A stretch of DNA of 64,000 nucleotides from positions 1,054,001-1,118,000 of the forward strand of contig MCFH01000009.1 in the NCBI GenBank assembly GCA_002104945.1. The letters are read 5' to 3'. Each line of letters opens with the position of its first letter. The first letter of the stretch is position 1. Positions 1-22,040 of the stretch are shown piece by piece. The position numbers and the translations under genes were made by a program. The DNA is from Piromyces finnis finn (lineage: Eukaryota; Fungi; Neocallimastigomycota). The notes beneath the pieces were generated by a model. That model saw nothing but the letters and a program-made list of their open reading frames with translations, was not told the DNA's origin and did no database searches.

Positions 1-91
1 TTTTTTTTTATAAATTTATAAATTATCAATTAATAAATTATAAATAAAATAAATATCTTAAAATATTATATTTTAATTTATTTAAAATTAC

Positions 92-3000
92 AATAAAATT
101 GATCATTTTTAAGGCTAATTCTTTAGTTATAAAAGTTCTTAATCGTTCTAATGAATTATTACTATATTTAAGGTTAACTTCATTTAAAGCTTCTCTTATA
201 TGTACAGCATTTTCAAGCAAAATTTTAATATTTGGATTTTCTTTTTGTTCCTCAATAAGATTTATATCATCTAAGTCAATATTATTCTTTGAAATTTTCT
301 TTTCTTTTAAACCTTTGTTTTCTTCTTTATTTCTATTATTTATTAATATTGCGTTTTTAGATTTTGTTTCATCATTAAACTTTATTTCATACTTATTATC
401 AGTGTTTCCTTCTTCTAAATCAATATTATCAATTTCTATTTTATTCACATCTTTAGGCATATTATTATTTAAAATTCCACTTTTCTTTGTTGCTATTTTT
501 TCTTTATTAATTTCCATATTTTTCTCTTCGTTTTTATCTGACTCAATATTTTTGATATTAATAAGATTTAGATCTTTATTATTTACATTGATATCAATTA
601 TTTCATAAGCATTATTTATTATTTTTTCATTATCTTTGCCAATATCAACCTTATTGCTATTATTATTATTATTAGTAGTAGTAGTGGTGGTGGTGTTGGT
701 AAGTATATTATTAGCTTTTTTATTATTGTTTGGAGTAAAATCAATAGGAATATCATCCAAAATATATGTAGTTTTACCCTTATTATCGCTATTATTATCA
801 TTATTTTTAATTTCTACCACCATATCTTCATCTTCATTCATTTTTTCATTACTGTTTTCATGATTATAATCAATGGAATTGTTATTTATTATATTTGCAG
901 GTGTTTTACTATTATTATAATTATTATCTTGACTAAAATCTATTTTAATTTCATTGTTATTTACAAATGAAACTTTATCTTCAATAATTGACTTAGATAA
1001 ATCAGAAGATTCATATAAATTAGAACTTTGGTTTATTTCTTCATCATTTATCTCTGTATCTCTCTGTACCTCATGGAAATTATCGTACGAATCATTTGAT
1101 ATATCTTTATCAGTATTTATAAACGAAGGAGTACTACAAATAGAAAATTTTACTTCATCTAAATATTTATTTTCGTCATCTTTATTTAAATATGCATTTG
1201 GATTGTAAATCATCATTAAATACCAATGCATAGCTTCATTGATCGGAATGAAAATATACTTTTTATCAAAAATATCAACTTTAGATGTCCATTTCTTAAC
1301 ACTCTCATACATTTTATTAGGCTTTAATGATCTTCTACTGTAAAGTTGCTCAAAAAAAAAAGTATTGAAGAAATGTATATCGGATTTTTGTTCTTCTGTT
1401 AATATTACATTTTCTAACCACTTTATACAAAATTCAATTAAATTATCATTAAACATTTTCCCGCTTATTAATCTTTTTTCATCCTCTGTTGTTACTACCA
1501 CTGAATTAATTCCTTTAAATGGGAAAACAAATAAATCTTTTATTTCATCCATTTTCTTCTTTCGAAGAAATAATGAAAATTCAAAACTAAAATCATTTGA
1601 TGGAATACAATTTTGTTTTATAGATTTAGCTAAAATCTCATTCTTATTTCTTACTATTCTAATCAAAATTTTGATTATTTCGTTTTTATAAGGAACCTTT
1701 TTAGCAAATTTTCTTGCTAAAACAGAGCCATAAGAGTTAATAAAATTTTTTAAACTGGATAAATGAAAATCTTTAGCTCTGTCATTGAATACATATAAGC
1801 CATCAAAAAGGTCATTAATAATTAATTCAGTGTATTCATGTAAATGCATTAGAATTTTCTCTGTTAAATAAATCATATTTTGTCTAGGTTTTTTAGTTTT
1901 TAAAATAGTACTAACAATAAATTGTTCATTCGATTTTGAGTTCATTTTATCAACACCTCGTTCTAAAGAAGATGCTTTATGAAATTTTTCACTAAATGAA
2001 ATAGGACTTTCTGATTTTGATTTTCCTTTTGTTTTTTTTTTAATAATTTTTTTTGCAGCTGAAATCTTTGATAGGACTATATCAGTTGTTCTTACTTTTT
2101 TGATGTTTTCTCTTTTCGTTATTTTAATTTTTTCTTTTTCTTTTTTGCTATTTTTCTTTGTTTTATTATTAATAGAACTTTGCTTTAATTTCTTATTTTC
2201 CATATTGTTGCTACTTATTATTCTCATATTATTATTTCCACCTTCTAAATATTGTTGTACATTAACAATGTCATTATTATTATTGTTTGACTGATTTTGA
2301 AATTTCATTATTGGTAAATATTTTGTATTAATTTGATTTGATAATCTTCCGAAATTATTTAAATATTGCTGATTTGTTTCAACGTAATTATTTCTATTCA
2401 AATTAACTTGATTATTTAATATTGCATTTGATGGAGTATTACTTATATCTCTATTAAAATCATTTGTATTATTAATTATAATTGGCTTATTTTCAAAAAA
2501 GACATCATTATTAGGGCTCATATGACTTCGAGATTCGTTTTTCATTGGTCCTAAATTATTATCAATAGTTTTTATATAATTATTTACATTTTTTACAGTA
2601 TTTTGATTATTTACATTAAAATTGTTATTTGCAATATGAGTTTGATTTTGAAGTAAATTATTTATTGCCATTGTATTTTGATTCCCTTGAATATTTAATT
2701 CTGGTTGTTTTATATAAATATTATTTTGATTAATTATAAATGTTTGAAAAGGTGGATATGAAGACTGTTGTTGAAAGTTATTAATAGGATTTAGTTGATT
2801 ATTTGGTGTATGTATATTGTTGTTGTTATTAATATTATTGTTAAGAATTTCATTTGGTTTAGTTATCAAATCATTTATGCTTAAATTATGAGAATTTTGA
2901 TTGGGAATATTAAAATTAATATTATTATATTGTGAAACATTTTGTAAATGAAAAGGTAATTGATTATCAATAATTGAATTCGATAAATTATTATTATTTA

Positions 3001-3319
3001 TATTGTTGGATAATTGATTCTGATTTTGGTAAGGCGAAATTTGTACTGAGTAATTTTGTATAGATTTATTCAGATTATTCAAATTATTATTGATATTATT
3101 AAATTGTTGACTAGCATTATTGATATGTGAGAATTGTTGATTATTATTTGGAATAAGTGTTGTAAATTGAAAACTTTTATTTATTATATTATCAGACAAC
3201 ACTTGAGAAGAATTATTACGCATATTAATAGATGGAACTTGATAAGATACATTAGTTGATATAATATTTGATGCTATATGTGGAGGTTTATTATCAATTA
3301 TAATATTAGTTAAATATTG

Positions 3320-3352
<33 letters not shown>

Positions 3353-3358
3353 TAACAT
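92..3358 (-). CDS. Ulp2/SENP6-7-like SUMO protease (peptidase C48); first large exon, gene continues past the left edge
   Basis: The ORF contains a C48 catalytic-domain N-half: TTEDEKRL..FNDNLIEFCIKW..IHFFNTFFFEQL..VKKWTSKVDIFDKKYIFIPINEAMHWYL. It is preceded by an N/Q-rich N-terminus and followed by a long insertion. A GTAATT donor at 91 suggests the exon ends at 92. The QxNxxDCG catalytic-Cys motif is not in the window. Confidence 0.85.
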
Positions 3359-5338: not shown

Positions 5339-7381
5339 ATGCTTAAGCATTTTGTACTATTATTAGTTTTCCTTGTAAGCATAGCTTACAGTAGAACTGT
5401 ACATTTTAAATTTTTAGGTTTTGGTGAAAAAGCTGAAGTAATTGTTGATAATAAAAAATATAGTTTAACAAGAACTGCTGGAGAACCATATTTTAGTGCA
5501 AAAGTAAATGTTATTCCAGCAGGTTATTTTAAATATAAATATGTTCTTGACAATGTTGAAGAAGATTTTGAACGTGAATGTCCATTAGAAATGACTAAGA
5601 CATATATAGATTTCTATGGCAGAAAAGATACTATTAAAGAACTTGGTAAATTCCAATACTCAGAAAATCACTGGAATAGAAGTATAGGAAAAACTAATCT
5701 TTTTGATGATTCATATATTCCAACTATTCACATTACTGGTAATAAAACTGAAACATTTTTCCATAATCCAGCAATAAGTATTAAAGCTGAAAAGGTTACA
5801 GTTTATTTAAAAGATGAAAAGAAAGCCTTTACTAATGTTCCTCTTGTAGCTAAAAATAAGGATTTTGAAAAATTCCAAATTAAAATGACATTGAGTAAGA
5901 CTGCTAATATTCATCAAAGATATTTATTAAAATTCCGTAATGGTAGTGAAGATCCAATTAATCTTCGTCAAACTATTTATGGTAACATTAATCAAGCTAT
6001 TGGTATACCAAGTATTCATTCTGTTATGGTTCGAGTTTACTACAATATGAAACCTGCAGGTTTCTATACTATGCAAGAAGAAGCTGTAAGTGAATCATTC
6101 TTAAGAGCTGAATTCTATGGTAATGCCGAAACTGAAACTATTGATGCCCCATCCTCAATGGGTGATGCATTTGACTGTTCAACTGGTGGTGATTTTGAAT
6201 ATAAACCATATAATATGTCTTACTATGATCCATTTGCACAAAAAATTGGAAAAGATAAAACCAAGGTTGTTGCTTTAACTGAAGCTATTGAAAAATTAGA
6301 TACAAATAATGAAGAAGAATTGGCTGAATTTGAAAAGAAATGGTTTGATATTGATACTTTCCAAAAAGCTATGTGTATGGAATATTTAACTGGTGACTGG
6401 GATGGTTATTGGTTCTTTACTAGTAATTTTGTTGTTTATGAAGATATTAAAAGTTCTACTGAAAATACATTCAAGTTCTTCTATATTACTCAAGATCATG
6501 ATGAAACATTTGGTGTAGGTATTACAGATAGAATTAACACAGTTGGATACGATTTTCCAAAGTTATCTTATACAACTATGCTTAATAAAACATGGCATTT
6601 AGATCCATTCGATGCTGACCATCGTACTTTAGTTGATAAATTCATTGCATCTTCTCCAAAGCTTCAACAACGTTTCCAAAATAATCTTATTTCAATTGTC
6701 CAAAATATTTTCAACCCTGTAGCTTTCAGAAAAGTAGTTGATACTTACTATGAACGTTATGAACCAGAAGTTAAATGGGATTATTCATTTGAACGTCCAT
6801 ATAGACGTACAAAAATGGTTCCAGACTGGCGTTATAATGATTTCTTAGTTGCTTTTGAAAATAGTCTTCCAGGTCTTCCATGGGGTCTTTATGAATGGGT
6901 TAAACTCAGATCTGAAGCTATAAAGAATGAATTTTGCATTTCTTGGGAAGGAGATGAAAATCCACCAGATGCTTCATGTGTACCATACAAGATTCCATAT
7001 TTAGATGATGAAAAGACTACTGTTGTTGAAGAACCAACTACTACTATGTTAGAAGAAACAACCACTACTAATGTTGAACCAACTACTACTTCATTAGAAG
7101 AAACAACTACTACTAATGCTGAACCAACTACCACTTCATTAGAAGAAACAACTACTACTAATGCTGAACCAACTACCACTTCATTAGAAGAAACAACTAC
7201 TACTGCTGAACCAACTACCACTTCATTAGAAGAAACAACTACTACTAATGCTGAACCAACTACTACTAAAAGTACTAAGACTATTCCAACTAGTGTTGGT
7301 GGATTTGTCGATTGGTTTAAGAACAAGAAACCAAGTGATTTTCAAAATCCAAAAGTTAAGAGAACTCTTCAAGTTCAATAA
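5339..7381 (+). CDS. cotH: CotH-kinase-domain protein 1: signal peptide, CotH domain, Thr/Glu-rich stalk, short basic tail; intronless
   Basis: N-terminal hydrophobic signal MLKHFVLLLVFLVSIAYS. CotH motifs are FRNGSEDPINLRQ, VRVYYNMKPAGFYTMQEE, EYLTGDWDGYW..SNF and QDHDETFG. The 680-aa ORF is uninterrupted. Confidence 0.9.
   Translation: MLKHFVLLLVFLVSIAYSRTVHFKFLGFGEKAEVIVDNKKYSLTRTAGEPYFSAKVNVIPAGYFKYKYVLDNVEEDFERECPLEMTKTYIDFYGRKDTIKELGKFQYSENHWNRSIGKTNLFDDSYIPTIHITGNKTETFFHNPAISIKAEKVTVYLKDEKKAFTNVPLVAKNKDFEKFQIKMTLSKTANIHQRYLLKFRNGSEDPINLRQTIYGNINQAIGIPSIHSVMVRVYYNMKPAGFYTMQEEAVSESFLRAEFYGNAETETIDAPSSMGDAFDCSTGGDFEYKPYNMSYYDPFAQKIGKDKTKVVALTEAIEKLDTNNEEELAEFEKKWFDIDTFQKAMCMEYLTGDWDGYWFFTSNFVVYEDIKSSTENTFKFFYITQDHDETFGVGITDRINTVGYDFPKLSYTTMLNKTWHLDPFDADHRTLVDKFIASSPKLQQRFQNNLISIVQNIFNPVAFRKVVDTYYERYEPEVKWDYSFERPYRRTKMVPDWRYNDFLVAFENSLPGLPWGLYEWVKLRSEAIKNEFCISWEGDENPPDASCVPYKIPYLDDEKTTVVEEPTTTMLEETTTTNVEPTTTSLEETTTTNAEPTTTSLEETTTTNAEPTTTSLEETTTTAEPTTTSLEETTTTNAEPTTTKSTKTIPTSVGGFVDWFKNKKPSDFQNPKVKRTLQVQ
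7031..7267 (+). repeat. Coding tandem repeat, 45-bp unit (EPTTTSLEETTTTNA), five units plus a partial
   Basis: Units start at 7031, 7076, 7121, 7166 (42 bp, lacks the Asn codon), 7208 and 7253 (partial). Confidence 0.95.
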
Positions 7382-9733
7382 AAATGTGGATTATATTAAA
7401 TCTAAATAATAGAAATTAAAAAACATTTAAAATTTATTTTATTAAATTTAACTATAGAAAGATAAATTTAACTATAGAAAAAAACAACAAATTCCAAAAA
7501 AAAAAAAAAAAAATAATTCACTGAATATAAATAATATTACAATATATTTTTTTTAAGTAATTAAAGTAAAAACAGAACAACAACAAATAACAACAACAAT
7601 AATAAAATAATAAAGAATTCAAATTTCCCTTAAATATTATATGTATATCTTAATAATTTATAAAGAAAATATAATTTTTGCACAAAAAAATGTAATCATA
7701 CTTATAAAATAAATAAAAAAAAATAAAATAAAAATATAATGAAAATAAAGTCTTATGATTTTATAATAAATAAAGTTTAATATAAAAAATATTTATTTCT
7801 TGTTATTATAACAAATAATTTAAAAATAATATAAAAATGTTATGAATTTAATATAGACGTCTCCTTTTTTTTTTTATTATGAATATACTATAATTATATA
7901 TTTACGGTAACTTTTACAAATATATTTTAATATATATTAATATATATTAATGTGAACATTTGATTTTAATAAAAATTTTTGAAAAAAAAATTTTTTTATT
8001 TAAAATTATTTTATGATTAAAAATATATGGAATAAAAAAACAAAAAAAAAAAAAACAAGCAATTCATTTCTAATAAATAATGATGATAAGATTAGAAAGT
8101 CTTATATGTCTAGATCGATTATTCTATAGTGAAATAAAAATATATTATCATCCATCAAGCTACAAATTAATCCACAATTAAAATTTATAGTTTAATTGCG
8201 GTAATAATCATAATAGTATAATATATAATATATTTTAAATTTAGGTATATTAAAATATATTAATACTAGAAAAGTAATTTTAAGTGGTCTTTTATATTCA
8301 TAAAATTTATTATTTCTCTTTCTTATTTTCCATCTTTTAATAATTTTTTTTTTATTAAATTCTTATGAAACCAATAAATAATAATTTATATATATGAGGA
8401 TATAAAAAAAAATTATATATATATTTCTATAGTTGGGATATTTTATTTTATTATTGTTGCCATTTTCGATTATTATTTAAATTTATTGTACTAAATTTTT
8501 ATTATAAATATATTAATTTTTTATAATTTTATAATAGAAATGAATTGAACAAAGAAAGTTCTTTTATAGAATTTTTTATATAATTAAAAATCTTTATATA
8601 TTATTTTTTTATATTCCATTGACAATTTTTATTAAGAAAGAAAGAAATAATTATTTATATATTGTAAATGGTAAATGATACATTTTTTTTTAATTCTTTT
8701 GTAGGGATTTATTTATTCTATTTCGTTTTTTATAATTACTAAGCCTATCTTTTTTTTTTTTACGGTCTAAATATTTTAAAATCTTTATTAGATTAATTGA
8801 AAGCATGATATAATAATAAAAAATAAATTAAAAATTAAATTTAATTAAACCACAAAATGAATTAAAATGGATATAATGTATTATAGAAATTCTAATCAAC
8901 GTTTAAGGTCAAAGGTTAAATAATTGTATTTGACTTTCATTGGTTGCACTTAACCATATTGGCTTACTCTACTTTTTCTTGGCTGTTGCTTTAAACATTT
9001 TACTATTGTTGATTATCGCAATACTAAATCAAAAAAAGTTTTAATATACACATTATTTTTAATTATAAAAAAAAAAAAAATTGACTTTTTAATAATTTTT
9101 TTATTATTACTATAAATTTTTTTTAATAAGAAATGTAAAAACTCATTTTTATTTTCTTATTACTATTTATATTCAATTTAACCTTTTTCGACATATTTCA
9201 ACATATTGAATCAAATGTTTTAAAAGGATATTATTTTATTTTATTTTTCTTCATTAAAATAAAATAATTAAATTATAATTAATTATTATTATTATTATTA
9301 TTATGTTATAGTATATAGTATATATTATATTATTTATAAATTATAAATATTTATGTTGTTTAAAATGTTTTTATATTATGTGTATGTGTATTTTAGATTT
9401 GATAATCATAATGTGAAATAAAAATAATTTTAATGTATATATATATAAATTTTCTTTATATATATGCAATATTATTAAATATCAATAGATTCAACTAATG
9501 TTGAAATAAAAGTATTGAGCTATTAATTCATTAATTATTTTATGGTATGAAAATTTAAATATACAATAATTTTATTAAATACTTCTTTTCTTTTTTTTTT
9601 TTATTTTTCATACCATGCTAATATATATTAATTTTATATTTTATATTTATACTGTGATTTAATGGTATATTAATATCTATTATAGTTGATTTCTTTTTCT
9701 AGATTTCTCTTAATATTTATAATTTAATTATGT

Positions 9734-11862
9734 TTAATATAATATCATGGCTAAACAAAAAGAAATTAATATAGTGTAAATACTCCATATCATCTTAGCA
9801 TTAGCATTGGATGTTTGATTTGGATTTTCAACGTAACCTAAATCGTTTTCAAAGTTTTCTGGAATCATAATACCCAATTCTTTAGCAAGAAGGTCTGATT
9901 TAGTATTGATAAAGTATTTGATTGGCATATTGCCATATCTGGCTTCTGGTTCTTCATTAGAAACGTGTGAATCAAAATCACTTTTTTCAAAAATAAGATC
10001 AGTATCAATTTGTGAATCTGATTGACTAACCCTTGGAAGTGTGAAGTCCCAATAAGCATCTTCCCTAATAAGATTAGCTAAAGAATCGAGACGTGGTAAA
10101 ATGGCTTTTGGATGGAAGGAAGTCTTAAGAAGACGATCAAAAATTGAAACAAATTTTTCCTTATTTTCTGAATGACTAAGAATTGAATCAAGTGGTGGTC
10201 TTGATCTTTCAACACCATCATCAAGTGTTGGAGGATAATTTGAAAGAGGAGTATTCAACATAAGATCTTCATCACCACCAACACCGAAACTGAAATGAAA
10301 ATCAGTATCATGGAAATACCATTGATCCTTAGAAAGATCTTTGAAAACGTAATAATTTCCCGGTTTATTCCAATAGTTATCAATAGCACCTGCAAGATAT
10401 TCCATTGCCATATATCTTAAGAATATATCTATATCAAATGGCATTTTGTCAGTTGCACCAGATGTATATGCATTTATATCCTTAATTAATGGAAGAAGTT
10501 CATTGATAAAATGTGAATCTGAATCTGAACTTTTATCCTCGCCTTTATATGTGTAAATACTATACATTGGATTAGTGGCATCATCACCATAATAACCTAA
10601 ATCACCATAAACAGGTCTATCACTACAAGATGAATAACAATAATCAGCCTTGAATATAGGATTTTCATTTTTATATTTTTTACCCTTATTAAAGGTTTCC
10701 CTGAGATAACGATTATTATTAATAGGATCAGTGATATCGAACAAACCAATGGCTTCACCATTAATGAAAAGACGAGCTAGTTTATTTTGGGCAGCTGGAA
10801 CACCAAGAGAATTTAATATATCACCATAGAGTTTATCTCTTAAAAATGATGGATCCATATGTTCAGCACGTAATTTAATAGAAGAACGATTGAAAAGTTC
10901 CTTATTTTTATCGTTCTTTAAATTTTTAATCTTGTAACTAAGCTTTGGAGCATGCTTTGTTGATTGACCTCCAAGACTTAAATATGTATTTTTATAAGTC
11001 TTCACGCCATATGGGCTAAATGAAATTTATATTTTATTAAAGAGAAGGTATATATAAATATTTTTATTGTTAAATTAATATTTGTTTTTAAATATTTAAT
11101 AAATATACAAGTCATATTTCTTACTTTGCATATATAACTTCAGCATTAATCTTTAATCCTTCATCATCAAGATTTTGATAAAGCCCTTGTAAATCGTTTG
11201 GGTCACATTTAACAATAATTGTTGCAATATGAGTATCTTTAATGGTATAAAAAAAGAATTAATAAAAAAAATTATTACTTTTATTTTTTCTTTGTTTTCT
11301 GTAAAAAAATTACTTTATATTTTTTTTCTTACCATCATATAATTTTGATGGAACATAATGTGGAAAAGCCTTATAAGCTTTTGGTAATTGAGGATGTTCA
11401 AGGACTGTGACAGATCTATTAAAAAATTCATTTAAAGAGTCATCATCCTTGTTACGTTGACGCATAAACTCTTCAATTTCATTTTGTCCATTATCATAAT
11501 TTAAAATATAATTATATTTTACAGGAAAACTATTAATATCAGCTTCAACAGTATAAAGTGGATACTCTTTTACATTCATTTTATATTGTTGTCCTCCTTC
11601 AATATTAAGAGTTGGAGTACCATTGACTGCCAAAACTTTGAAGGTAACTGTCATTAAAAAAAAAGTTTAAAAAAAATATTTTAATATATTTCTAAATATC
11701 ATAAATTACATAAATTAAATAGGAGAATTATATATATCAATTTATCTTTTTATTTATTTTTATAAAAAAAAAATTTTGTTATTGATATTTACCCTTTTCA
11801 GAATTAACCAATAATGCTTCGAGGGATACTAATAATAAGTTTAGAGACTTGTTAAATTTCAT
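9734..11862 (-). CDS. cotH: CotH-kinase-domain protein 2, secreted with GPI-type C-terminus; 4 exons
   Basis: Exons 11862-11793 (MKFNKSLNLLLVSLEALLVNSEK), 11647-11333, 11236-11125 and 11015-9734 are all GT..AG and stay in frame. Motifs are GGQSTKHAPKLSYKIK, KLRAEHMDPSFLRDKLY, EYLAGAIDNYWNKPGNYY and HDTDFHFSFG. The C-terminus is hydrophobic (IWSIYTILISFCLAMILY). Confidence 0.9.
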
Positions 11863-13037
11863 CTTTAAGTTATGGCTTTATTTTTTATATGTATTCTTTT
11901 TCTATATATATATATAAAATTTCATATATGAATAAATATATTAATTGAAATTGATGATTTTATTTTTATTTTTTATTATTAGTTATTTTATACTTTATTT
12001 ACGTTTTACTAATTTTATTATTTTTATTTTGTTATCGTTGTTTATTATATTATATATTTAATATATTATTTATATTATTTTTCTTTTTCTCGTTTTTTTT
12101 TTGAAAAAAAAAGAAAAAAGAAAAAAGCTTTTAATTTATAGTAAATTTTAATTAAAAAATTTTATGGACTTATATAAAAATGTTTCAAAATAAAAAAAGG
12201 TTATATATAAAATTATTAATTACTGTATATAAAATAATAATTTTATTTTATATTTCATTATATTTATATTATATATTATTTAAATTTATTTTATTATAAG
12301 AATTATAGGAATTTCTGCCATATTAAAAAAAAAAAACTTTTCACATTATTGTAATAAAATGTCCGTATTTAATTTATTTAATTAAATATTTTATTTTAAT
12401 TAAAATATAAAAATTTAGTTTTTATTATCATATGATTATAATGCATTATTAAAAAATTTTTATATTTGAAGTTATATAATATTTTTTCAACAACGAAATT
12501 CTTTCAAAAGTAGAAACAAAAATAATAAAAAAAAAAAAACAGTTTTAAACTTTTTTTTATTAATGGTTTATTTACTATTAAATACTTAAATATATATATT
12601 ATATTAAAAAATAAAATAATAATAATAATGGCATTATTATAGTTATGTTAATTATATATATAAGATTTCTTTTATTATCATCATTTTTTTTTTTGAAACT
12701 AGAAACCTTTTTTTTGTTTATTAAATTAGTTTATAATGCCGATAAAGAATATTATTATTTTACCTTTTTTTTTTTTATAAAAAATATTTTTTTATATATT
12801 GTAATATTAACTATAAATTTATAATATTTTATTTATTATTTTTATTATTTTGTTATTTATAATAATTAATATTATTAATATTTATTCTATTTATGTTAAT
12901 TCTTTATTTTGGTTCTTTTTTTATTTTCTTTTACTTTTCACATGATAAATAATTTTTATTTTATTTTCTTATTTATCGTGAAAAATAAATAACATTGTTG
13001 TATATAACAATCCCCTGTTTTTTTTCTTTTTCTTTAC

Positions 13038-14949
13038 TTAAAATAATATATAGGATATGAACATAGCCATAAATGAAGAAAAGACAACCATTGAAAGACT
13101 CCTTGATGTACCGGAGAAAGAACTAACACTAGCTTTTTGACTTGGGTTTTCTACCATACCTAAATCTGTTTCATATTGTTCTGGTACTTGAATACCTAAT
13201 TCTTGTGATACTAAAGCAATCTTATTTCTTATAAAGTACTTAAGTGGAACAGTTTCGAATCTACTGACTTCTTGAGTACTAGTAACATGAGTTAAGAAAT
13301 CATCAAAATTATAGTTTAATTCAGTATCATGTTGACCAACAAGTTGACTAACTCTTGGAATGGAATAATCCCATTGAGCATCTTCATAAATAAGTTCAAC
13401 AAATGAGTCAATTCTAGAATATAAACTTCCAGTATGGAAAGAAGTTTTAAGGAGACGATCAAAAATTTGAGTAAATCTAGCTTTGTTTTCCGGACGAGAA
13501 AGAATTGCATCAAGTGGTGGTCGAGCTTTGTCAACCTTTGGATCGTGAATTGGTGGGTAATCAGAGAGTGGGGTATTTATCATTAAATCTGGTTCACCTC
13601 CAACACCGAAACTAAAATGGAAATCAGCATCATGGAAATACCATTTTCCTTTAGCGACATCCTTATATAAAAAGTAATTACCTGGCTTGTTCCAGTAATT
13701 ATCAATTGCACCAGCAAGAAATTCAACAGCCATATACTTTAAGAAAGTATCAATATCGAAGGACATTGTTTCAGTTTGATAATTAGCATATGCATTTATT
13801 TCTCTTACTAATGGGATAATTTCGTTTGCAACGTGTGTCATACTTGGTGTTGTATTATCATCACCCTTGTAGGAATAAACAGCGTACATTGGTTCATTAA
13901 TATCCTCACCATAATAACCTAAATCACTGTAGACAGCACCAATTCCACAACTTGGACAGTAATCAGCCTTAAAGATAGGATTTTCTTGAGTATATTTTTC
14001 ACCTTTGTTAAATGTTTCTCTAAGATAACGTCCACTAGTGATATCATCAGAAAGATCAAATAAACCAACAGGTTGGCCATTAATAAATACACGAGCAAAC
14101 TTATTTTGAGCAGCTGGTACACCGAGAGAATTTAAAATATCACCATAAATTTTATCTCTTAAGAAGGATGGATCCATATGTTCAGCACGTAATTTAATTG
14201 ATGAACGATTAAAAAGTTCCTTATTATCATCGGATTTTAAGTTTTTAAGCTTGTAACTAAGTTTTGGTACTCCTCTTGTTGATTGACCACTTATACTTAA
14301 TATTGCATTATTGAAAGTTTTAACTGAATAAGGACTAGCATATACAACAACAGCATTAGCTTTAAGTTCTTGATCAGTTGGATTTTGATACATTTGTTGT
14401 AATAATTGATTATCAACATTAATTATAATTGTAGATACATGAGTATCATCATATAACTTTGATGGTTCGTAAAATTCAAAAGGTTGATAAGCCTTAGGAA
14501 CTTGTGGATGTTCAATAACAGTTTGGCTTCTATTGAAAAATTCATTTAAAGATTTTTCTTCTTTTTCACGTTTACGAGAAAAGCTTTCTTGTTCAGAACT
14601 TCCATCAGCATATACAATATTATAATTATATTCTACTGGAAATTTATCAACTTCAACTTTTGCTTTATAAAGAGGATATTCCTCTAGAGTCATTTCGTAT
14701 TGTTGACCATTTACTGTAACAAATGGTGTACCATTTATAGCTAATACCTTGAATGAAACTTTTTTATAATTAAGTTTTTAATTATTTTTTTTTATTATTT
14801 ATAAAGTATATGAATTTATTAATTATGAAATATTTAAAATTTATTAGTTTTTTACCAATAATTTATAAATTTTGCTTACCTTTATCAGCATTAATTAATA
14901 ATACTTTTACTGAAGCTAATATTATATATAATGATTTTCCAAATTTCAT
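13038..14949 (-). CDS. cotH: CotH-kinase-domain protein 3, secreted with GPI-type C-terminus; 2 exons
   Basis: Exon 1 is 14949-14880 (MKFGKSLYIILASVKVLLINADK, GTAAGC donor) and exon 2 is 14758-13038. It carries the same motifs as paralogue 2 (EFLAGAIDNYWNKPGNYF, HDADFHFSFG). The C-terminus is SSFSGTSRSLSMVVFSSFMAMFISYILF. Confidence 0.92.
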
Positions 14950-17900
14950 TTTATATTATTCTTTTTTTTTAAAAAAAAAAAAAATTTAAAAAATTATGTT
15001 AGTAATTGTATTTTAAAACCTTAAAATTTATCATTTATTTTTTTTCCTAATTATTAAAATTATTGATTCCTCTAATAAACTAATATATTGATTACTATTT
15101 TTTACTTAAATTTTGAGTATATATATAATTTTAAATCCCAATTTTATTAATTCTTTATATTATAAAGAAGAAACCAATAAAAATATTTAAAATTAAATGT
15201 CTATAATTATTTATTATTTTTTTATTTTAAATTCTATTATTTTACTGAGATTTTTTTTTACAATATAAAGTTTTTTTTTTATTTGCACTTTTAATACAAT
15301 ATATTTTATCATTGATATAGATGTAAATTATTTTATAAATAATCATATAAAAAACATTTACTTTTTATAATTTCAGAGGAAGATATATACAGGATTTATT
15401 TATTATTATTTTTTTTGGCTTTAATAAATTAATCTATAAGAATTAAGTATAGCTTTTAGCATATACATAACAAATTTATATTTGGGTACTTTTTTCTTTC
15501 TTTTTTTTATATATAGATATACTTTATATATCTACTTTTATTGTTTTTTTTTATTCTTGTTCTTATTTTATTTTGTAATTATTTCCTTTTATTATTATTA
15601 TTTTTTTTTTAATTTTATTCTTTCAAAAAAATAAAAAAAAAAAAAAATTAAATATTCCAAGAAATTTTAAATATTTACTGTTTTGTCAATAATAAATGAT
15701 ATATATTAAATTAATATATATAATTCACAATCGAATTAATTTTAATTTATTAATTATATTATAATAAATTATTTTTATATAGTTTGGCATATTATTAACC
15801 TTAAAAAAAGGAAATAGTAACCAAAACACTAAAGAAAAAAAAAAAACTATGCCTAACTGGAACCACTAGATCAAATAAATTATCAAACTGATTATGATTT
15901 TTTTATAATTAATTTTAAATATTAATAAAACTAATATAAGAAGTTATGCATTATTATTTAATTTTGTTAAAACGAATATTACACAATAGAAATATAATAT
16001 TAATATATCATAATTAAATATTATACAATTATGATATTTAATTTATAATATATATAGAATATATTGTTTATTTATATACATTTATTAATTTATTAATAAA
16101 ATATTTATCTGCATTAAATAATAATTAGTACAATATTATAAGAATTATATTTATTAGAATTATATTTAATTAGAAATATAGTATTATAAAAATTAATAAA
16201 AGAAAATTAAAAATTAATTAATTATATAATTATACAATATTTATTTTTTATTTTATTCAATATATATAATATTATATCTATGTATTTAAAAAATATTATA
16301 TATATTGTATTATTATTTATAATATATTGATGGGGTAAGCTTTTATATTGATTAAAATTACAATTGATAATAATTAATAGATAAAAGGAAACATTAGAAC
16401 ATTAACAAAAAATAGAATAAATTAAACTAAATTCAATATTAATAATAAACGGACGGTATTTATTTAAATAAAAAGTTATTTGTTATTTTTTGTCCTAAAT
16501 ATGTCATATTAAATTTAACTAAATTAGTAAAATATTTGTATTATTCTGTATTGTGTTAATTTTTATTTTTATTATAATATTATATACAAAAAAATTAAAA
16601 AAATATTAAATTCAATTGATACAAAGGATAAAATTGTACATTTATTTTTTGATATATATTTTATAATAATTAAAGTTTATAAATGTAATATAACATTGTC
16701 ACACAATACTTTTTAATAATTTCCCGTAAGCCATATTAGTATAAGAATTAATATTCTCAAGTTATATAAACATTCACGTGTTTAAATAAAATTATATTAA
16801 CATGTAATAGAAAAAACATTATTATAATTATTGATGATTTTTAAAAGTTTACTTTAATTATACATACTAAATATTAACTATATATTAACTATTAGTTGTA
16901 ATAAATAAAAAAAATTTTATAATAATAAATTAAAACTAAAACAAATACACTAAAGTCAATAGAAACTAAATTTTCTTATTATAACAAAAATAATACTATT
17001 CATAAATATATTCAATACATATATTTTATGAATACACATGTTTATACCTACAAGATATAACTGTTTAGTAAATAATCTTAATTATCATTATTACAAATGT
17101 TTTTTTATATTAATTACTATTTGAAATTATTAAATGATAAATCATTATTATTATGCTGTACTATCATATGAATATAAAAATTTATAGATATTTTTATTAT
17201 AAATAAAATTATTCATGTTCAATTTTTCTTTAATTATATAACAGTATCATTTAATATTTTAATAATTTAAAACTTTATAATTTATATATTCAATATTAAA
17301 ACTTTATTAATCCATGTTTATATTTAAAATAATAAAATGAAAGCATGGTTAAATTTTTAATAAAAAGTTTTGTAGGTAAGAAAATAAGAAAAAATGCTAA
17401 TAATATTAATAATAGTAAATTATATATATATATATATATATATAATATCTACTAAAATGTTTATTAAAAAAGACAATTCAATTTCCCATGAGATACTAGT
17501 ACATTTAAGTTTAATTATACATTTTAACTTTTGAAAATATTTAATATCATATATAATATCATAATTATTTTATTTCTATTTATTTTAATCTTAAATTCGA
17601 ATTTATTGAAAATTTAATGTTTAATTATATGTATTTCACTAAAATTTAATTAATAATAATTATTAATATATTATTTATTTTAATTATTAATAAAAAGGTT
17701 AATTATGTGGTGGGAGTTGTGCTGATAGAAAACATTAAATAATTTATTAAATCATTGTTTATATATTCACTCATTTTAAGCTTTAATAATTTTTATATAA
17801 ACATTTTAATAAAAATAGTAATAATAATAATAAAAAAAAACTTTTTTATTTTTATATAAATTCTTATATCCTTTTATTCATAAATTTTAGTGTTCAAAAG

Positions 17901-18061
17901 GTTGAATGATTAATATAAGAATATTTGAAATTTTTATAATATAATAATTAAACAAAAAACAAAAAATAGTTTTTTATTTAATAATAAATGTATTTAACAT
18001 TTTAAAATTAATATTTTTTTTGAAATATATTTTTAATATAAAATAGCAAAACTAAAAAATC

Positions 18062-19153
18062 ATGAGAATAAAAAATTTCTTTTTTTTAACGTACTTTCCG
18101 ACGGTTTTTTGTGATGGTATTATTAAGAAATAAAAAAAATAACTATGTTAATAATAATGAATTTAATTAATTCATATTATGACTATTCTTATAATATATA
18201 TATTTATTAAATAAAACAAAAATAATGAAAAGTTACTTTTAGGGTTATTGCTCCAAAAGGAAAGCCATCTGTCATTGTTAACAATTTATCATACCCAATG
18301 GAAGTTCATGAATTTCCACTTTATAAAGTTAAAGTTAATGTAGATCCACCAGTTAAATATTATTATTCTTTAGATTTTGCAGGAACAAATGAAGAAGGAA
18401 GAGGTGTTGAAAATGAGCAATTTGAAAGAGAATTACAATCAGGGAAAGAAACTTTAAATGAATTTTTTAACAGAAAAATTACTGTAAAGGAACATCCAGC
18501 ACTTCCAAAGGCCTATGATAAATATGAAATGTATATTCCTTCAAAGTTATTTGATGGTAATATATATACATATATATATTGATATTTATAGAAGAGAATA
18601 TTTTAGTAATAACAATATATTTTATATTATATGAAGATACTCATGTTGCTACAGTTTTAATTAATTGTAATGCTGATGCAATTAATTCAATTCATCAAGA
18701 TCCAACCTCCGAAGAAAAAATTTATGGTGCAGAATTCATTTATGCTACGTATGTATAAATATTAAATATATTAATAATTAATAATATTAATTTTTATAAT
18801 ATATATAATGTATATTAAAAATTTAATGGGTATTATTGTTTTATATTTATAATAGTCCATACAGTATTAGAACTTTTAACAATGCAACTGTAAGAATTTC
18901 TGGTCAGTCTGTAAGTATTATATATCTTATAAATTATGAAAATTAATAGTATTGCTTATTTTTTAATCAATAAATATCAAAAAAAAAAAAAAATTGTATG
19001 ATAATAGACACTTTACACTTCAAAATTAAGTTATAAGATTTCAAATTTAAAGAATGATAAAAATAAAGAATTATATAAGCGTTCAAGTATCAAATTAAGA
19101 GCTGAACAAATGGATCCAACTTTTTTAAGGTATTTTAATTATATTATAAAAAA

Positions 19154-19194
<41 letters not shown>

Positions 19195-20605
19195 ATATTT
19201 CTATTTTATAACAAGTATAAAAATATGGTTAATGAGCTATTGAACATAGTTTTTTTTATATAATATATAAATAATAATAAAAATAAAAGAAATAGTTTAT
19301 ACTTAATATAGAATATTTACAAAAAATTTTTAGACTCACTTGATTGTATTTAATGAAATTTTTATAAAAAATGACTAAAAATTAAATTTTATTAATTCTA
19401 ATATTATATAAATATTCTTTAATCTTTAAAAATATCAATAATCTATATTATATATTATATTGTTCATATTTTAATAAAAAAGAGACAAAATATATTCAGA
19501 TATTTTGAATTCACTTGGTGTACCAACTCCACAAAATAAGTTTGCTAGATTATATATTAATGGTGATCCAATAGGTTTATTTGATTTAACAGATAGTGTA
19601 GCCAACCAAAGATATTTAAGAGAAACCTTAAATGAAGGTACTAAATTCGAAATTGAGAATCCATTATATAAAGCTGATTACTTCCCACCTACTGCTTGGG
19701 GTGATTTAGGTTATTATGGTGATGAACCAACTGCTGAAAGATACAGTATTTACTACTATCAAGGTAAAAGTATGGAAACTCTTGATCAAGATAAGCAATA
19801 TGAAAGAAATATAGAAATGAACAAGGAATATTTAATTCCATTTCTTAAACAAATTAACAACTATCCAGATGGTAATTTAAACATGGATATAAAAATGTTC
19901 CTTAAATTTATGGCTATGGAATTTTTAGGAGGTGCAGTAGATAACTTCTGGAATAGACCTGGAAATTATTATATTTATAAGAATATGAATTATAATAATG
20001 GACAATGGTTATTCCTTGATAGTGACTTTCATTTCACATTTGGTATTGGTGGTGATAAAATTAATGAATACCTTTCAACTACTATTGATGGTTATACTTC
20101 AGTTAATGATATAGATGAAATTGGTCCAGAAAGACCACTTATAGATAATATTAGAAAAAATCCAGATAATGAAAAATTTTTCATTGAAGTTTTTTCTAGA
20201 TTAATAAGTACTGCATTTCATATTGATGCTATTTTCCCACGTATTGATTCGTTGGCTGAATTAATTAGAGATGATGTTCTATGGGATTATGATCTTCCAA
20301 GAGTAAGTGGTTATCCAGATGCTGAAAATTATCAATATACTGAATCCGATTTTGAAAATCAAATAAACAATCAAGATTCAGGTTGTGAGAATTTTTCAAA
20401 TGGTATTTCAATAAAATGTTGGATTAGAAATAAAGGTTTAAATATTGCTTCTCAATTAGGATTCCAATACCCAGACGAACCTGATTATTCCAAAGGAACT
20501 GTTGAAACTTTAGTACAAACTTCAGAGAAAGATGCTGCATCTAAAGTTCAAGTATCTATTTTCACTATTAGTATTATTACATTAATTGTTACTTTATTAT
20601 TTTAA
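18062..20605 (+). CDS. cotH: CotH-kinase-domain protein 4, GPI-type C-terminus; 6 exons
   Basis: Exons 18062-18116 (MRIKNFFFLTYFPTVFCD; least certain), 18233-18556, 18637-18748, 18856-18910, 19008-19129 and 19483-20605 splice in frame. Motifs are ISGQSTLYTSKLSYKI, KLRAEQMDPTFLRDKIY, EFLGGAVDNFWNRPGNYY and LDSDFHFTFG. The tail is VSIFTISIITLIVTLLF. Confidence 0.88.
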
Positions 20606-21280: not shown

Positions 21281-22040
21281 CCGATGGACTGCATGAGTTT
21301 ATAAAGCTGTATCGTTTATATTTTTATACTCTATTTCAAAAGATTTGAATATTCCTCCATTGTCATCCAAATGTGCGTTAGCTCAGGTTAGATGTTTTAA
21401 CAAATGGAAAAGCTCAAATTATATTATCTCACACCTTGTCAATTACATTCCTAAATTTAGAAAATATACATGGTACAAATCAAGTAGGACACTTGATAAA
21501 AAATTAAAGAAACATGGAGATATTAAAGCAGTTAAAAACTTTTATTGGAAAGATCTCAAAGGGAATTCAATCAAAGCACATTATTATGATGATAATAAAT
21601 TTATTGAAACTAAAGATTTTATCAAATTATGTTATGAATACCCAGAGTTTGCCTATGACATCTACTGGCTATTGAAAGCAAGAAGCGGATACAAGTTGGA
21701 TGCTAGAGTTGCAAAAGCTGCTAAATTTGTTGATCCAGTTTGTCCTAACTACTGTCCATGTTGCAAGTGTGGGGTTCAAAGTATTAAGCATTGGTTATTA
21801 GATTGTCCAACATTTAGAGATATCCGTATTAAGCATTATGATTCCATAGTCCAGCTATTAAATTTTTTCAGTCAACGTAATTCCAACAGTCCTATCAATA
21901 ATATTGAAAATGTTAGAGATAACAATAATATTAATAGTAATAGTAACAATAGTAGTAATAATAATAACAATAGTAATAGTAGAAATAGTAATAATAATAA
22001 TTCTAATTTAGGCCAGCGCAACAACCAATGGAGATCATAA
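21279..22040 (+). mobile_element. 5'-truncated, degenerate non-LTR (LINE-like) retrotransposon ORF2 C-terminal fragment
   Basis: The frame reads YRWTA*VYKAVSF..SKDLNIPPLS, with an in-frame TGA. It continues to WLLKARSGY and CPCCKCGVQSIKHWLLDC, the CCHC zinc knuckle typical of the LINE ORF2 C-terminus. No RT core is present, and GC content is higher than in the flanks. Confidence 0.75.

What the first reader, a model, noticed from the sequence alone, without database searches (positions are those of the whole stretch)
5339..20605. Four-gene CotH cluster of non-cellulosomal, probably surface-displayed kinase-fold proteins
Seen: four CotH genes lie in about 15 kb (+, -, -, +) with no other gene between them. 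Three share the architecture signal peptide, small N-terminal domain (VTFKV..P(L/K)Y..YxY..ExFxR..LNEFFNR), CotH domain, short Ser/Ala-rich spacer and hydrophobic C-terminal tail. None has a Cys-rich fungal dockerin. Known: CotH proteins are atypical kinases. Anaerobic fungi have large CotH expansions, often dockerin-fused and found in cellulosomes. In Mucorales, signal-CotH-GPI proteins such as Rhizopus CotH3 are surface invasins binding host GRP78. Inference: this locus may encode a cell-surface adhesin or ecto-kinase set (one stalked secreted member plus three anchored members) for attachment to plant tissue, partner methanogens or gut epithelium, or for zoospore/cyst wall assembly.
Basis: partly seen in the sequence, partly recalled or inferred. 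Interest (0 to 1): 0.75.

Follow-up and report, generated by a model that had tools for sequence, protein, structure and literature searches.

The report
Surface-anchored CotH kinase gene cluster
Four neighbouring genes of the gut fungus Piromyces finnis encode secreted CotH-type kinases with no cellulosome tag: three end in a GPI-anchor-like tail and one in a sugar-coated stalk, so they probably work at the fungus's own surface or wall, like their known relatives in Mucor and Rhizopus.

Summary
The window (Piromyces finnis, contig C222) carries four CotH genes at 5339-20605 in the order +,-,-,+, with no other gene between them. I built clean GT-AG gene models. Genes g2, g3 and g4 (592, 596 and 596 aa) each have a signal peptide, an N-terminal beta-sandwich, a CotH kinase core, a Ser-rich spacer and a hydrophobic end of about 19-20 residues. 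Gene g1 (680 aa) has the same first three parts, then a Thr-rich 15-aa x5 stalk and a conserved basic end.

A dockerin HMM found 43 domains in 40 paralogous loci and none in the 64-kb window. Among 385 CotH proteins, no dockerin-bearing protein had the N-domain. The N-domain type ends in a GPI-like tail (92), in chitin-binding CBM18 modules (41) or in neither (108).

The catalytic Asp/Asn/Asp triad is invariant in all tail-type members and in all four genes. The g3 model (pLDDT 93) matches the Bacillus CotH kinase structure. Gene order is conserved in Piromyces sp. E2. An Anaeromyces poly(A) transcript ends just after the tail, with no dockerin exon.

GPI anchoring rests on heuristics only, because no dedicated predictor was available. 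The Rhizopus invasin motif is absent.

Verdict: these are ordinary but undescribed dockerin-free members of a known family, most likely wall or surface kinases rather than adhesins. The scan had already found the CBM18-tethered sister type on this contig.

The parts
5339..7381 (+). g1: single-exon CotH gene, 680 aa. It encodes a signal peptide, a divergent N-domain, the CotH kinase core, a Thr-rich stalk and a conserved basic C-terminal peptide. It has no hydrophobic tail.
   Evidence: ORF. Pfam CotH E = 5e-18. 100% match to a 680-aa database protein (P0121). Belongs to AGF group C in the tree. Catalytic residues are kept.
7031..7267 (+). g1 stalk: a 45-nt tandem repeat, 5.3 copies, 93% matches, encoding EPTTTSLEETTTTNA-type units (a mucin-like, probably O-glycosylated linker).
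   Evidence: Tandem Repeats Finder. Translation.
11793..11862 (-). g2 exon 1: start codon and signal peptide, followed by a phase-1 intron.
   Evidence: Donor is GTAAAT.
11333..11647 (-). g2 exon 2: N-terminal beta-sandwich domain (VTFKV...LNEFFNR...SKLYD).
   Evidence: (HMM positions 4-105).
11125..11236 (-). g2 exon 3: linker and start of the kinase N-lobe.
   Evidence: Acceptor ends AG, donor is GTAAGA.
9734..11015 (-). g2 exon 4: CotH kinase core, Asn/Ser/Ala spacer, 19-residue uncharged hydrophobic end, stop codon.
   Evidence: Pfam CotH E = 2e-33. Tail analysis. The model length (592 aa) equals that of the deposited protein P0014.
14880..14949 (-). g3 exon 1: start codon and signal peptide, followed by a phase-1 intron.
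   Evidence: Donor is GTAAGC.
13038..14758 (-). g3 exon 2: the whole mature protein (N-domain, CotH kinase, Ser-rich spacer, 20-residue hydrophobic end).
   Evidence: Pfam CotH E = 1e-36. 100% match to the 596-aa P. finnis protein P0001. AlphaFold model with pLDDT 93.2. Foldseek match to 5jda/5jd9, E = 7e-16.
18062..18116 (+). g4 exon 1: start codon and signal peptide. This exon is missing from the deposited 556-aa model.
   Evidence: The Piromyces sp. E2 ortholog P0067 starts with a closely similar signal peptide.
18233..18556 (+). g4 exon 2: N-terminal beta-sandwich domain.
18637..19129 (+). g4 exons 3-5 (18637-18748, 18856-18910, 19008-19129): linker and kinase N-lobe, with their introns.
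   Evidence: All introns are GT..AG and the joined frame is open.
19483..20605 (+). g4 exon 6: CotH kinase core, spacer, 19-residue hydrophobic end, stop codon.
   Evidence: Pfam CotH E = 5e-22. Tail analysis.

Best explanation
The locus is an old tandem cluster of four 'fungal-type' CotH atypical protein kinases that enter the secretory pathway and are not cellulosome parts. Each has a signal peptide, a small CBM20-like beta-sandwich and a CotH kinase core with an intact active site.

Genes g2, g3 and g4 end in a polar spacer plus a hydrophobic tail of about 19-20 residues. This most likely acts as a GPI-attachment signal, so the kinase would end up tethered to the outer face of the plasma membrane or cross-linked into the wall. 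Gene g1 instead carries a Thr-rich, probably O-glycosylated stalk and a conserved basic end, and is secreted or held in the wall by other means.

The inferred mechanism follows Bacillus CotH (which phosphorylates coat proteins) and Mucor CotH4 (spore-wall and chitin phenotype). The kinases would phosphorylate secreted or wall proteins, in the secretory pathway (where I assume ATP is available) or at the surface, and so help to build or remodel the thallus, cyst or zoospore surface.

Shown here: gene models, domain order, absence of dockerin, kinase fold, conserved catalytic residues, conserved synteny, and a transcript end in an ortholog. Inferred: signal-peptide cleavage, GPI attachment, kinase activity, substrates and the wall role.
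For: - Family and fold: Pfam CotH in all four genes. The g3 model has pLDDT 93.2 and pTM 0.90, with a disordered spacer (545-556) and a terminal helix. Its best structural matches are B. cereus CotH kinase 5jda/5jd9 (E = 7e-16, TM 0.80-0.82 normalised to the target), followed by PI3K-like and CtkA kinases.
- Active site: a profile alignment to 5jd9 places g3-mature D352, N360 and D378 on the residues that correspond to B. subtilis D228 and D251, whose mutation inactivates CotH (PMC7821199). These residues are invariant in 92/92 tail-type and 41/41 CBM18-type N-domain CotH proteins and in g1-g4.
- No dockerin: 0 dockerins in the window against 43 in 40 paralogous loci. Dockerin and N-domain never occur together in 385 proteins.
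- Tail: the uncharged C-terminal run has a median of 20 aa and the protein ends with it. 80/92 tails pass a de Groot-type fungal GPI pattern, and 84/92 have a small-residue triplet 20-33 aa from the end (23-25 aa in g2, g3 and g4).
- GPI machinery: Gaa1 and Gpi16 genes are present in the genome.
- Relatives: zygomycete relatives have the same signal-peptide-to-tail layout. Mucor CotH2/4/10/12 are predicted GPI proteins, and loss of CotH4 alters the spore wall and its chitin (PMC9973265). NetGPI predicts 26% of CotH proteins in that study's fungal secretomes (chiefly zygomycetes) to be GPI-anchored (PMC9391592).
- Wall link: sister clades replace the tail with chitin-binding CBM18 modules.
- Age and expression: the same gene order and orientation occur in Piromyces sp. 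E2. A spliced poly(A) transcript of an Anaeromyces ortholog ends after the tail.
Against: - No trained signal-peptide or GPI predictor could be run. The GPI pattern was recalled from memory, and g2 fails it, although g2 has small triplets (SNA, ANA) at the right distance.
- No expression data for the P. finnis genes themselves were found.
- Kinase activity has not been shown for any N-domain fungal CotH that I could find.
- ATP supply outside the cell is doubtful, so the site of action is a guess.
- The tree has no bacterial outgroup and is only midpoint-rooted.
Confidence: 0.55

Rival explanations
1. The hydrophobic end is not removed. It acts as a C-terminal transmembrane anchor, making a type I membrane protein with no cytoplasmic tail. 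The kinase would be displayed on the plasma membrane but never transferred to the wall.
For: AlphaFold draws residues 555-571 of mature g3 as a helix. The uncharged run of about 19-20 residues is long enough to span a membrane. g2 fails the GPI pattern.
Against: The proteins stop exactly at the end of the hydrophobic run, with no basic stop-transfer residues. A small-residue triplet sits 20-33 residues from the end in 84/92 family members, preceded by a Ser/Lys/Asn/Asp-rich spacer. This is the classic layout of a GPI signal. Mucoralean relatives with the same layout are predicted GPI proteins.
Confidence: 0.2
2. The proteins are mainly adhesins or invasins like Rhizopus CotH2/3. They would bind a partner surface (host epithelium, methanogen, plant tissue), and catalysis would be irrelevant.
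For: The overall layout matches that of surface CotH proteins of Mucorales. The family is greatly expanded in gut-dwelling fungi (PMC10079182).
Against: The GRP78-binding motif (QTNDGAY core) is absent from g1-g4 and from all 360 retrieved relatives. In the midpoint-rooted tree the anaerobic-fungal groups do not fall inside the sampled zygomycete clades (none of which carries the CotH2/3 motif). The Asp/Asn/Asp catalytic triad is invariant in every tail-type member, which a pure adhesin would not need.
Confidence: 0.12
3. The N-terminal CBM20-like module targets the kinases to alpha-glucan or plant polysaccharide. They would then be substrate-attachment or biomass-sensing factors, serving outside the cellulosome the role suggested for dockerin-bearing CotH.
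For: The best structural matches of the N-domain are the CBM20 modules of STBD1, laforin and T. reesei glucoamylase (Z = 8.6, 8.5 and 8.5, with 76-87 residues aligned), followed by many other starch-binding modules. Foldseek lists the same fold types weakly.
Against: Z of about 8 is at the level the tool itself calls common for unrelated beta-sandwiches. Pfam finds no CBM_20 in the N-domain exons. The N-domain model is confident only for residues 1-70. No binding-site residues were checked. The same N-domain occurs in Mucorales and Basidiobolus CotH proteins, which do not degrade plant biomass in the gut.
Confidence: 0.1

Closest known systems
GPI-predicted CotH proteins of Mucorales (Mucor lusitanicus CotH2/4/10/12; Rhizopus CotH family)
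   Same: The layout is the same: signal peptide, N-terminal domain, CotH kinase core, Ser-rich spacer and hydrophobic C-terminal tail. Lengths are similar (about 590-630 aa), identity is 25-30% over 72-90% of the query's length, and the conserved Lys/Asp/Asn/Asp positions are shared. Mucor CotH4 affects the spore wall and its chitin (PMC9973265).
   Different: The QTNDGAY invasin motif is absent. The anaerobic-fungal sequences form their own groups B and C. Here they sit in a conserved four-gene tandem cluster.
Dockerin-bearing CotH proteins of anaerobic-fungal cellulosomes (about 20% of dockerin-domain proteins, as cited in PMC8665504)
   Same: Same organism, same Pfam family, and the same catalytic residues conserved.
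   Different: The dockerin type forms a separate clade (group A, 93 tips, support 1.0). It lacks the N-terminal domain and carries CBM10 dockerins. None of the 90 dockerin-bearing proteins has the N-domain. A published HGT survey traces 13 CotH xenologs to bacteria (PMC11291939). The window genes have no dockerin.
CBM18-tethered CotH kinases of anaerobic fungi (earlier scan finding s1-176734, same contig, 364 kb upstream)
   Same: Same groups B and C, and the same signal peptide, N-domain and kinase. They are dockerin-free and probably directed to the wall.
   Different: Their C-terminal module is one or more chitin-binding type-1 domains instead of the GPI-like tail (g2, g3, g4) or the stalk (g1).
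Bacillus CotH spore-coat kinase (PDB 5JD9/5JDA)
   Same: Same kinase fold (Foldseek E = 7e-16, TM 0.8 normalised to the target) and the same aligned catalytic Asp, Asn and metal-binding Asp. It works on an extracellular protein layer.
   Different: Identity is only about 15%. The bacterial protein has 359 residues and lacks the signal peptide, the CBM20-like N-domain and the anchor tail.

Membership tests
CotH kinase family (Pfam PF08757) | Profile match above the curated cut-off | tested here: met
   66-127 bits against a 23.8-bit cut-off for all four genes.
CotH kinase family (Pfam PF08757) | Atypical protein-kinase fold like 5JD9 | tested here: met
   The g3 model (pLDDT 93.2) matches 5jda/5jd9 with E = 7e-16 and TM 0.80-0.82 normalised to the target. 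g1, g2 and g4 were not folded.
CotH kinase family (Pfam PF08757) | Catalytic Asp and metal-binding Asp (B. subtilis D228, D251), plus the Asn of the catalytic loop | tested here: met
   Aligned through a profile to 5jd9. Present in g1-g4 and invariant in 92/92 tail-type relatives. The role of these residues is taken from PMC7821199.
CotH kinase family (Pfam PF08757) | Phosphotransfer activity | not testable with these tools
   Needs recombinant protein and a labelled-ATP assay.
GPI-anchored fungal surface proteins | N-terminal signal peptide | tested here: inconclusive
   Basic n-region, hydrophobic core and small residues at -1/-3 (NA|E, NS|E, FC|D) were read by eye and with a hydropathy window. 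The layout is conserved in orthologs. No SignalP was available.
GPI-anchored fungal surface proteins | C-terminal signal: small omega triplet, polar spacer, and a hydrophobic run that ends the protein | tested here: inconclusive
   g3 and g4 pass a de Groot-type pattern recalled from memory, and g2 fails it. All three have a 19-20-residue uncharged end and a small triplet 23-25 residues from the C-terminus. 80/92 relatives pass the pattern. No NetGPI, PredGPI or big-PI was available.
GPI-anchored fungal surface proteins | The organism has GPI transamidase | tested here: met
   Multi-exon Gaa1 (C163) and Gpi16 (C79) matches above the Pfam cut-offs.
GPI-anchored fungal surface proteins | Release by PI-PLC, or a lipid remnant seen by mass spectrometry | not testable with these tools
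   Experimental.
Rhizopus CotH2/CotH3-type invasins | GRP78-binding motif MGQTNDGAYRDPTDNN (QTNDGAY core) | tested here: not met
   A regular-expression search of g1-g4 and all 360 retrieved proteins found no match. The motif is taken from PMC10079182 and PMC9973265.
Fungal cellulosome dockerin-domain proteins | At least one CBM10 / non-catalytic dockerin domain | tested here: not met
   The dockerin HMM found 0 hits in six frames of the whole window and 43 hits in control loci of the same genome. The Pfam annotation of all close relatives lacks PF02013.
CBM20 starch-binding modules (N-domain) | Sequence-profile match, or a clear fold match with binding-site aromatic residues | tested here: inconclusive
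   No Pfam hit. VIA Z = 8.5-8.6 to three CBM20 modules, and Foldseek E >= 0.06. Binding residues were not examined.

The most novel reading that the evidence does not exclude
Anaerobic fungi, and zygomycetes with them, may run a secretory or extracellular phosphorylation system for their own wall. In it, CBM20-like-plus-CotH kinases are positioned by interchangeable anchors (GPI tail, chitin-binding CBM18, mucin stalk) and pattern wall proteins or even wall glycans. This would be a eukaryotic counterpart of the Bacillus spore-coat CotH module. The pairing of a CBM20-like module with a phosphotransferase recalls laforin, which pairs CBM20 with a glucan phosphatase. If so, much of the unexplained set of more than 100 CotH genes in these fungi concerns cell-surface construction rather than cellulosomes.
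Probability: 0.25. Interest if true: 0.7.

Novelty: new member of a known kind. Interest (0 to 1): 0.35.

Why it matters
Published work calls the reason for the large CotH expansion in anaerobic gut fungi unclear (PMC10079182), and discussion has centred on the dockerin-bearing, cellulosomal copies. This locus, together with the family survey, shows that two of the three anaerobic-fungal CotH groups are dockerin-free. They share an extra N-terminal module with zygomycete CotH proteins and carry wall or surface anchors: a GPI-like tail, CBM18 modules or a stalk. All keep an intact active site.

This gives a concrete and testable split of the family into a cellulosome part and a cell-surface part. 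It also offers four well-defined genes for localisation, kinase assays and stage-specific expression work. It does not reveal a new kind of system.

Tried and rejected
1. A full survey of all 124 or more CotH matches in the genome was cut short.
2. I sought a bacterial outgroup for the tree by searching with a dockerin-type paralog. All of the best 120 hits were anaerobic fungi, so the tree is only midpoint-rooted. The question 'dockerin type from bacteria, N-domain type from fungi' was left to the literature (PMC11291939).
3. The own-genome dockerin scan scored only 150 of 561 candidates and could not exclude the window. I replaced it with a local HMM.
4. Nguyen et al. 2016 (PMC4922149) is not held. 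The roles of the catalytic residues were taken from PMC7821199 instead.
5. One N-domain reference (L026:7766-8080) proved to be misplaced in alignment A2 and was dropped for A3.
6. I considered a downstream dockerin exon for g1 or g4 and rejected it, because there is no dockerin in any frame of the window.
7. I considered the Rhizopus invasin reading and rejected it for lack of the motif.
8. The joined spliced models of g2 and g4 were used only inside local scripts (alignment, tail statistics, tree). They were not handed to any search or folding tool. Those tools received single exons by reference: the g3 exon that holds the whole mature protein, the g1 ORF, and the separate exons of g2 and g4. 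A fold or database search of the joined g2 and g4 proteins was therefore left out.
9. The large representative-protein search and the protein atlas were not used, because the family assignment was not in doubt.
Full report
**What is there**

The window is G000:C222:1054001-1118000 of a 56.5-Mb, 232-contig genome with about 20% G+C. A 100% match to deposited proteins identifies the organism as Piromyces finnis. Pfam finds the CotH kinase domain (PF08757) in four genes between 5339 and 20605, with E = 5e-18, 2e-33, 1e-36 and 5e-22.

From the sequence and three-frame translations I derived gene models in which every intron is GT..AG.

| Gene | Strand | Exons | Length |
|---|---|---|---|
| g1 | + | 5339-7381 (one exon) | 680 aa |
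| g2 | - | 11862-11793, 11647-11333, 11236-11125, 11015-9734 | 592 aa |
| g3 | - | 14949-14880, 14758-13038 | 596 aa |
| g4 | + | 18062-18116, 18233-18556, 18637-18748, 18856-18910, 19008-19129, 19483-20605 | 596 aa |

In g2, g3 and g4 a phase-1 intron follows the signal-peptide exon at the same place. The g2 and g3 models have the lengths of the deposited proteins. The deposited g4 protein (556 aa) starts inside the N-domain and lacks the signal-peptide exon, which the Piromyces sp. E2 ortholog has.

Pairwise identity is 59% for g2/g3, 46-47% for g4 against g2 or g3, and 22-25% for g1 against the others. The intergenic stretches hold no ORF of 60 aa or more.

**Architecture**

- **Shared parts.** All four proteins begin with a hydrophobic signal-peptide-like segment that has small residues at -1 and -3. 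An N-terminal domain of about 70 residues follows, clear in g2, g3 and g4 and divergent but alignable in g1. Then come a linker and the CotH core.
- **g2, g3 and g4.** These continue with a Ser/Asn/Ala/Lys-rich spacer and stop at the end of a 19-20-residue uncharged hydrophobic run.
- **g1.** This gene instead has a 45-nt x 5.3 tandem repeat (7031-7267) that encodes a Thr-rich stalk. It ends in a basic peptide that is conserved in its orthologs.

**No dockerin**

The genome-wide CBM10 scan scored only part of its candidates. I therefore built a dockerin HMM from seven dockerins of this genome and iterated it once. It found 43 dockerin domains in 40 fetched paralogous loci and none in any frame of the 64-kb window. 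None of the 240 listed relatives of g3 and g1 carries PF02013 in its precomputed Pfam annotation.

**Kinase fold and active site**

The g3 exon that encodes the whole mature protein was folded with 54 aligned homologs. The model has mean pLDDT 93.2 and pTM 0.90, with a disordered spacer at 545-556 and a terminal helix at 555-571. Foldseek puts B. cereus CotH kinase first (5jda/5jd9, E = 7e-16 and 2e-15, TM 0.80-0.82 normalised to the target), followed by PI3K-type and CtkA kinases.

A profile alignment to 5jd9 (E = 1.7e-15) places D352, N360 and D378 of mature g3 on the Asp, Asn and Asp of the bacterial catalytic and metal-binding loops. By spacing, these correspond to B. subtilis D228 and D251, whose substitution inactivates CotH (PMC7821199). 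These three residues are invariant in 92/92 tail-type and 41/41 CBM18-type N-domain CotH proteins. K188 and D195 are invariant in the tail type, and K165 is Lys in 91 of 92. All six positions are present in g1-g4. Conservation this strict argues that catalysis matters.

**The N-domain**

Folded alone, the N-domain model has pLDDT of about 90 for residues 1-70 and 76 overall. Foldseek gives only weak matches (E >= 0.06), but they are to starch-binding-type beta-sandwiches.

The Foldseek-independent search puts three CBM20 modules on top: STBD1, laforin and T. reesei glucoamylase, with Z = 8.6, 8.5 and 8.5 and 76-87 residues aligned. Many further CBM20, 41, 26 and 56 modules follow. The tool's own guidance is that Z near 8 can be a common arrangement. 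I therefore call the domain CBM20-like in fold and leave glycan binding open.

**Family context**

The genome has at least 124 CotH matches. I pooled 35 full paralog frames, the four models and the proteins from three word searches, 385 sequences in all. The classes separate cleanly:

| C-terminal class | With N-domain | Without N-domain |
|---|---|---|
| Dockerin | 0 | 90 |
| Hydrophobic tail | 92 | 6 (likely truncated models) |
| CBM18 | 41 | 4 |
| Neither | 108 | 44 |

A FastTree of the kinase core (221 sequences after thinning, midpoint-rooted, no bacterial outgroup) gives three anaerobic-fungal groups:

- **Group A** is the dockerin type (93 tips, support 1.0).
- **Group B** (65 tips, support 0.986) holds g2 and g3 in an almost purely tail-type subclade. 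It holds g4 in another tail-type subclade next to a CBM18 subclade.
- **Group C** (54 tips, support 1.0) holds g1 and has its own tail-type and CBM18 subclades.

The zygomycete sequences lie next to group C. This agrees with the 'three AGF groups' of PMC10079182. The nearest relatives of g3 outside anaerobic fungi are Basidiobolus (32% identity), then Mortierellomycotina and Mucorales (26-30%). Most of these have a signal peptide and a hydrophobic end.

**GPI question**

No trained predictor was available, so I used rules of thumb. In the 92 tail-type proteins the terminal uncharged run has a median of 20 residues (quartiles 17-22) and the protein ends with it. 80 of them pass a de Groot-type fungal GPI pattern, which I recalled from memory. 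84 have a small-residue triplet 20-33 residues from the end.

Genes g3 and g4 pass the pattern. Gene g2 fails it but has SNA and ANA triplets 25 and 23 residues from the end. The genome encodes the transamidase subunits Gaa1 and Gpi16.

Published NetGPI runs% of that study's secreted fungal (chiefly zygomycete) CotH proteins GPI-anchored (PMC9391592). Four Mucor CotH proteins are predicted GPI proteins (PMC9973265). I rate GPI anchoring at about 0.7. A plain C-terminal membrane anchor is the main alternative.

**Age and expression**

In Piromyces sp. E2 the orthologs lie on one contig in the same order and orientation: g1(+), g2(-), g3(-), g4(+). One extra 989-aa gene with no Pfam match sits between the g2 and g3 orthologs. 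Anaeromyces robustus has two group-B genes in tandem and a third on the same contig. The g1 ortholog in Neocallimastix californiae has no CotH neighbour within 10 kb.

A Logan RNA assembly contig (L003) is the spliced product of the Anaeromyces gene, which is split over six blocks in the genome. It ends in poly(A) 219 nt after the stop that follows the tail. A 2-kb JGI contig carries an uninterrupted 594-aa ortholog of g3. So at least the orthologs are expressed and do not splice on dockerin exons. I found no transcript record for the P. finnis genes themselves.

**Function**

The Rhizopus CotH2/3 invasin motif is absent, so the comparison with CotH3 holds for layout but not for host binding. 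Three observations point to a role at the fungus's own surface or wall:

- the strict conservation of the active site;
- the replacement of the tail by chitin-binding modules in sister clades;
- the wall and chitin phenotype of Mucor cotH4 mutants.

Bacillus CotH patterns the spore coat by phosphorylation, and that is the working model here. Where ATP comes from is open; action in the secretory pathway before export is the simplest answer, but it is an inference.

Papers on anaerobic fungi that I could read discuss only the dockerin-bearing CotH proteins and call their role unclear. A survey of horizontal transfer traces 13 CotH xenologs to bacteria.

**Earlier scan notes**

The scan had already reported a pair of CBM18-tethered, dockerin-free CotH kinases 364 kb upstream on this contig (s1-176734) and an eight-CBM18 CotH elsewhere in the genome (s1-171805). 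My family survey independently shows these CBM18 forms as sister clades of the tail-type genes.

**Limits**

- The joined spliced proteins of g2 and g4 were used only in local scripts. No search or fold was run on them; those tools received single exons by reference.
- The paralog survey is partial.
- The tree is unrooted in effect.
- The signal-peptide and GPI calls are heuristic.

**Verdict**

These are new, undescribed members of a known kind, namely secreted GPI-type fungal CotH kinases. They are of moderate interest as a handle on the non-cellulosomal part of the anaerobic-fungal CotH expansion.

Noticed in passing
window 7268-7381 (g1 C-terminus); orthologs P0122-P0134, P0142, P0154: After the Thr-rich stalk, g1 and most of its orthologs in Piromyces, Neocallimastix and metatranscriptome contigs end in a conserved basic peptide (GGF[VL]DWFKxKKPxDF, then a dibasic K-R, then 5-12 residues). 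This might be a Kex2-type processing site or a wall- or membrane-binding peptide. I have no explanation.
   Followed up: partly
L025:2917-8172 (-) = G000:C68:44277-49532 (-); L026:2821-5895 (-): One 1752-aa open frame carries three complete CotH domains in a row, and the neighbouring 1025-aa frame carries two. These would be multi-kinase CotH proteins.
   Followed up: no
window 21345-22040 (+): A 231-aa ORF just downstream of g4 has a Cys/His-rich knuckle and an Asn/Ser low-complexity tail. It has no Pfam hit. It looks like the tail of a retroelement ORF2. An (ATT)/(TAT) simple repeat lies just upstream of it.
   Followed up: partly
window 47543-52918 (-): A 1792-aa open frame has PH_5 (E = 3.5e-22) and CNH (E = 7e-52) domains. 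This is the C-terminal half of a Rom1/Rom2-type Rho-GEF, which in yeasts belongs to the cell-wall-integrity pathway (my own knowledge). It lies 27 kb from the cluster, so the proximity is probably coincidental.
   Followed up: no
L001:13003-15995 (+) and L046:19608-21923 (-), Piromyces sp. E2 contig KZ150774: A 989-aa gene with no Pfam match lies between the g2 and g3 orthologs in Piromyces sp. E2 and is absent at the same place in P. finnis. It may be a mobile-element insertion.
   Followed up: no
window 19154-19193: A perfect (ATT)13 microsatellite lies inside intron 5 of g4.
   Followed up: no
window 18062-18116: The deposited g4 protein (P0076, 556 aa) starts at an internal Met and lacks the signal-peptide exon and the first part of the N-domain. 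The 596-aa model given here restores them, in line with the Piromyces sp. E2 ortholog P0067.
   Followed up: yes
window 38-3358 (-): A 1106-aa ORF upstream of g1 has no Pfam match.
   Followed up: no
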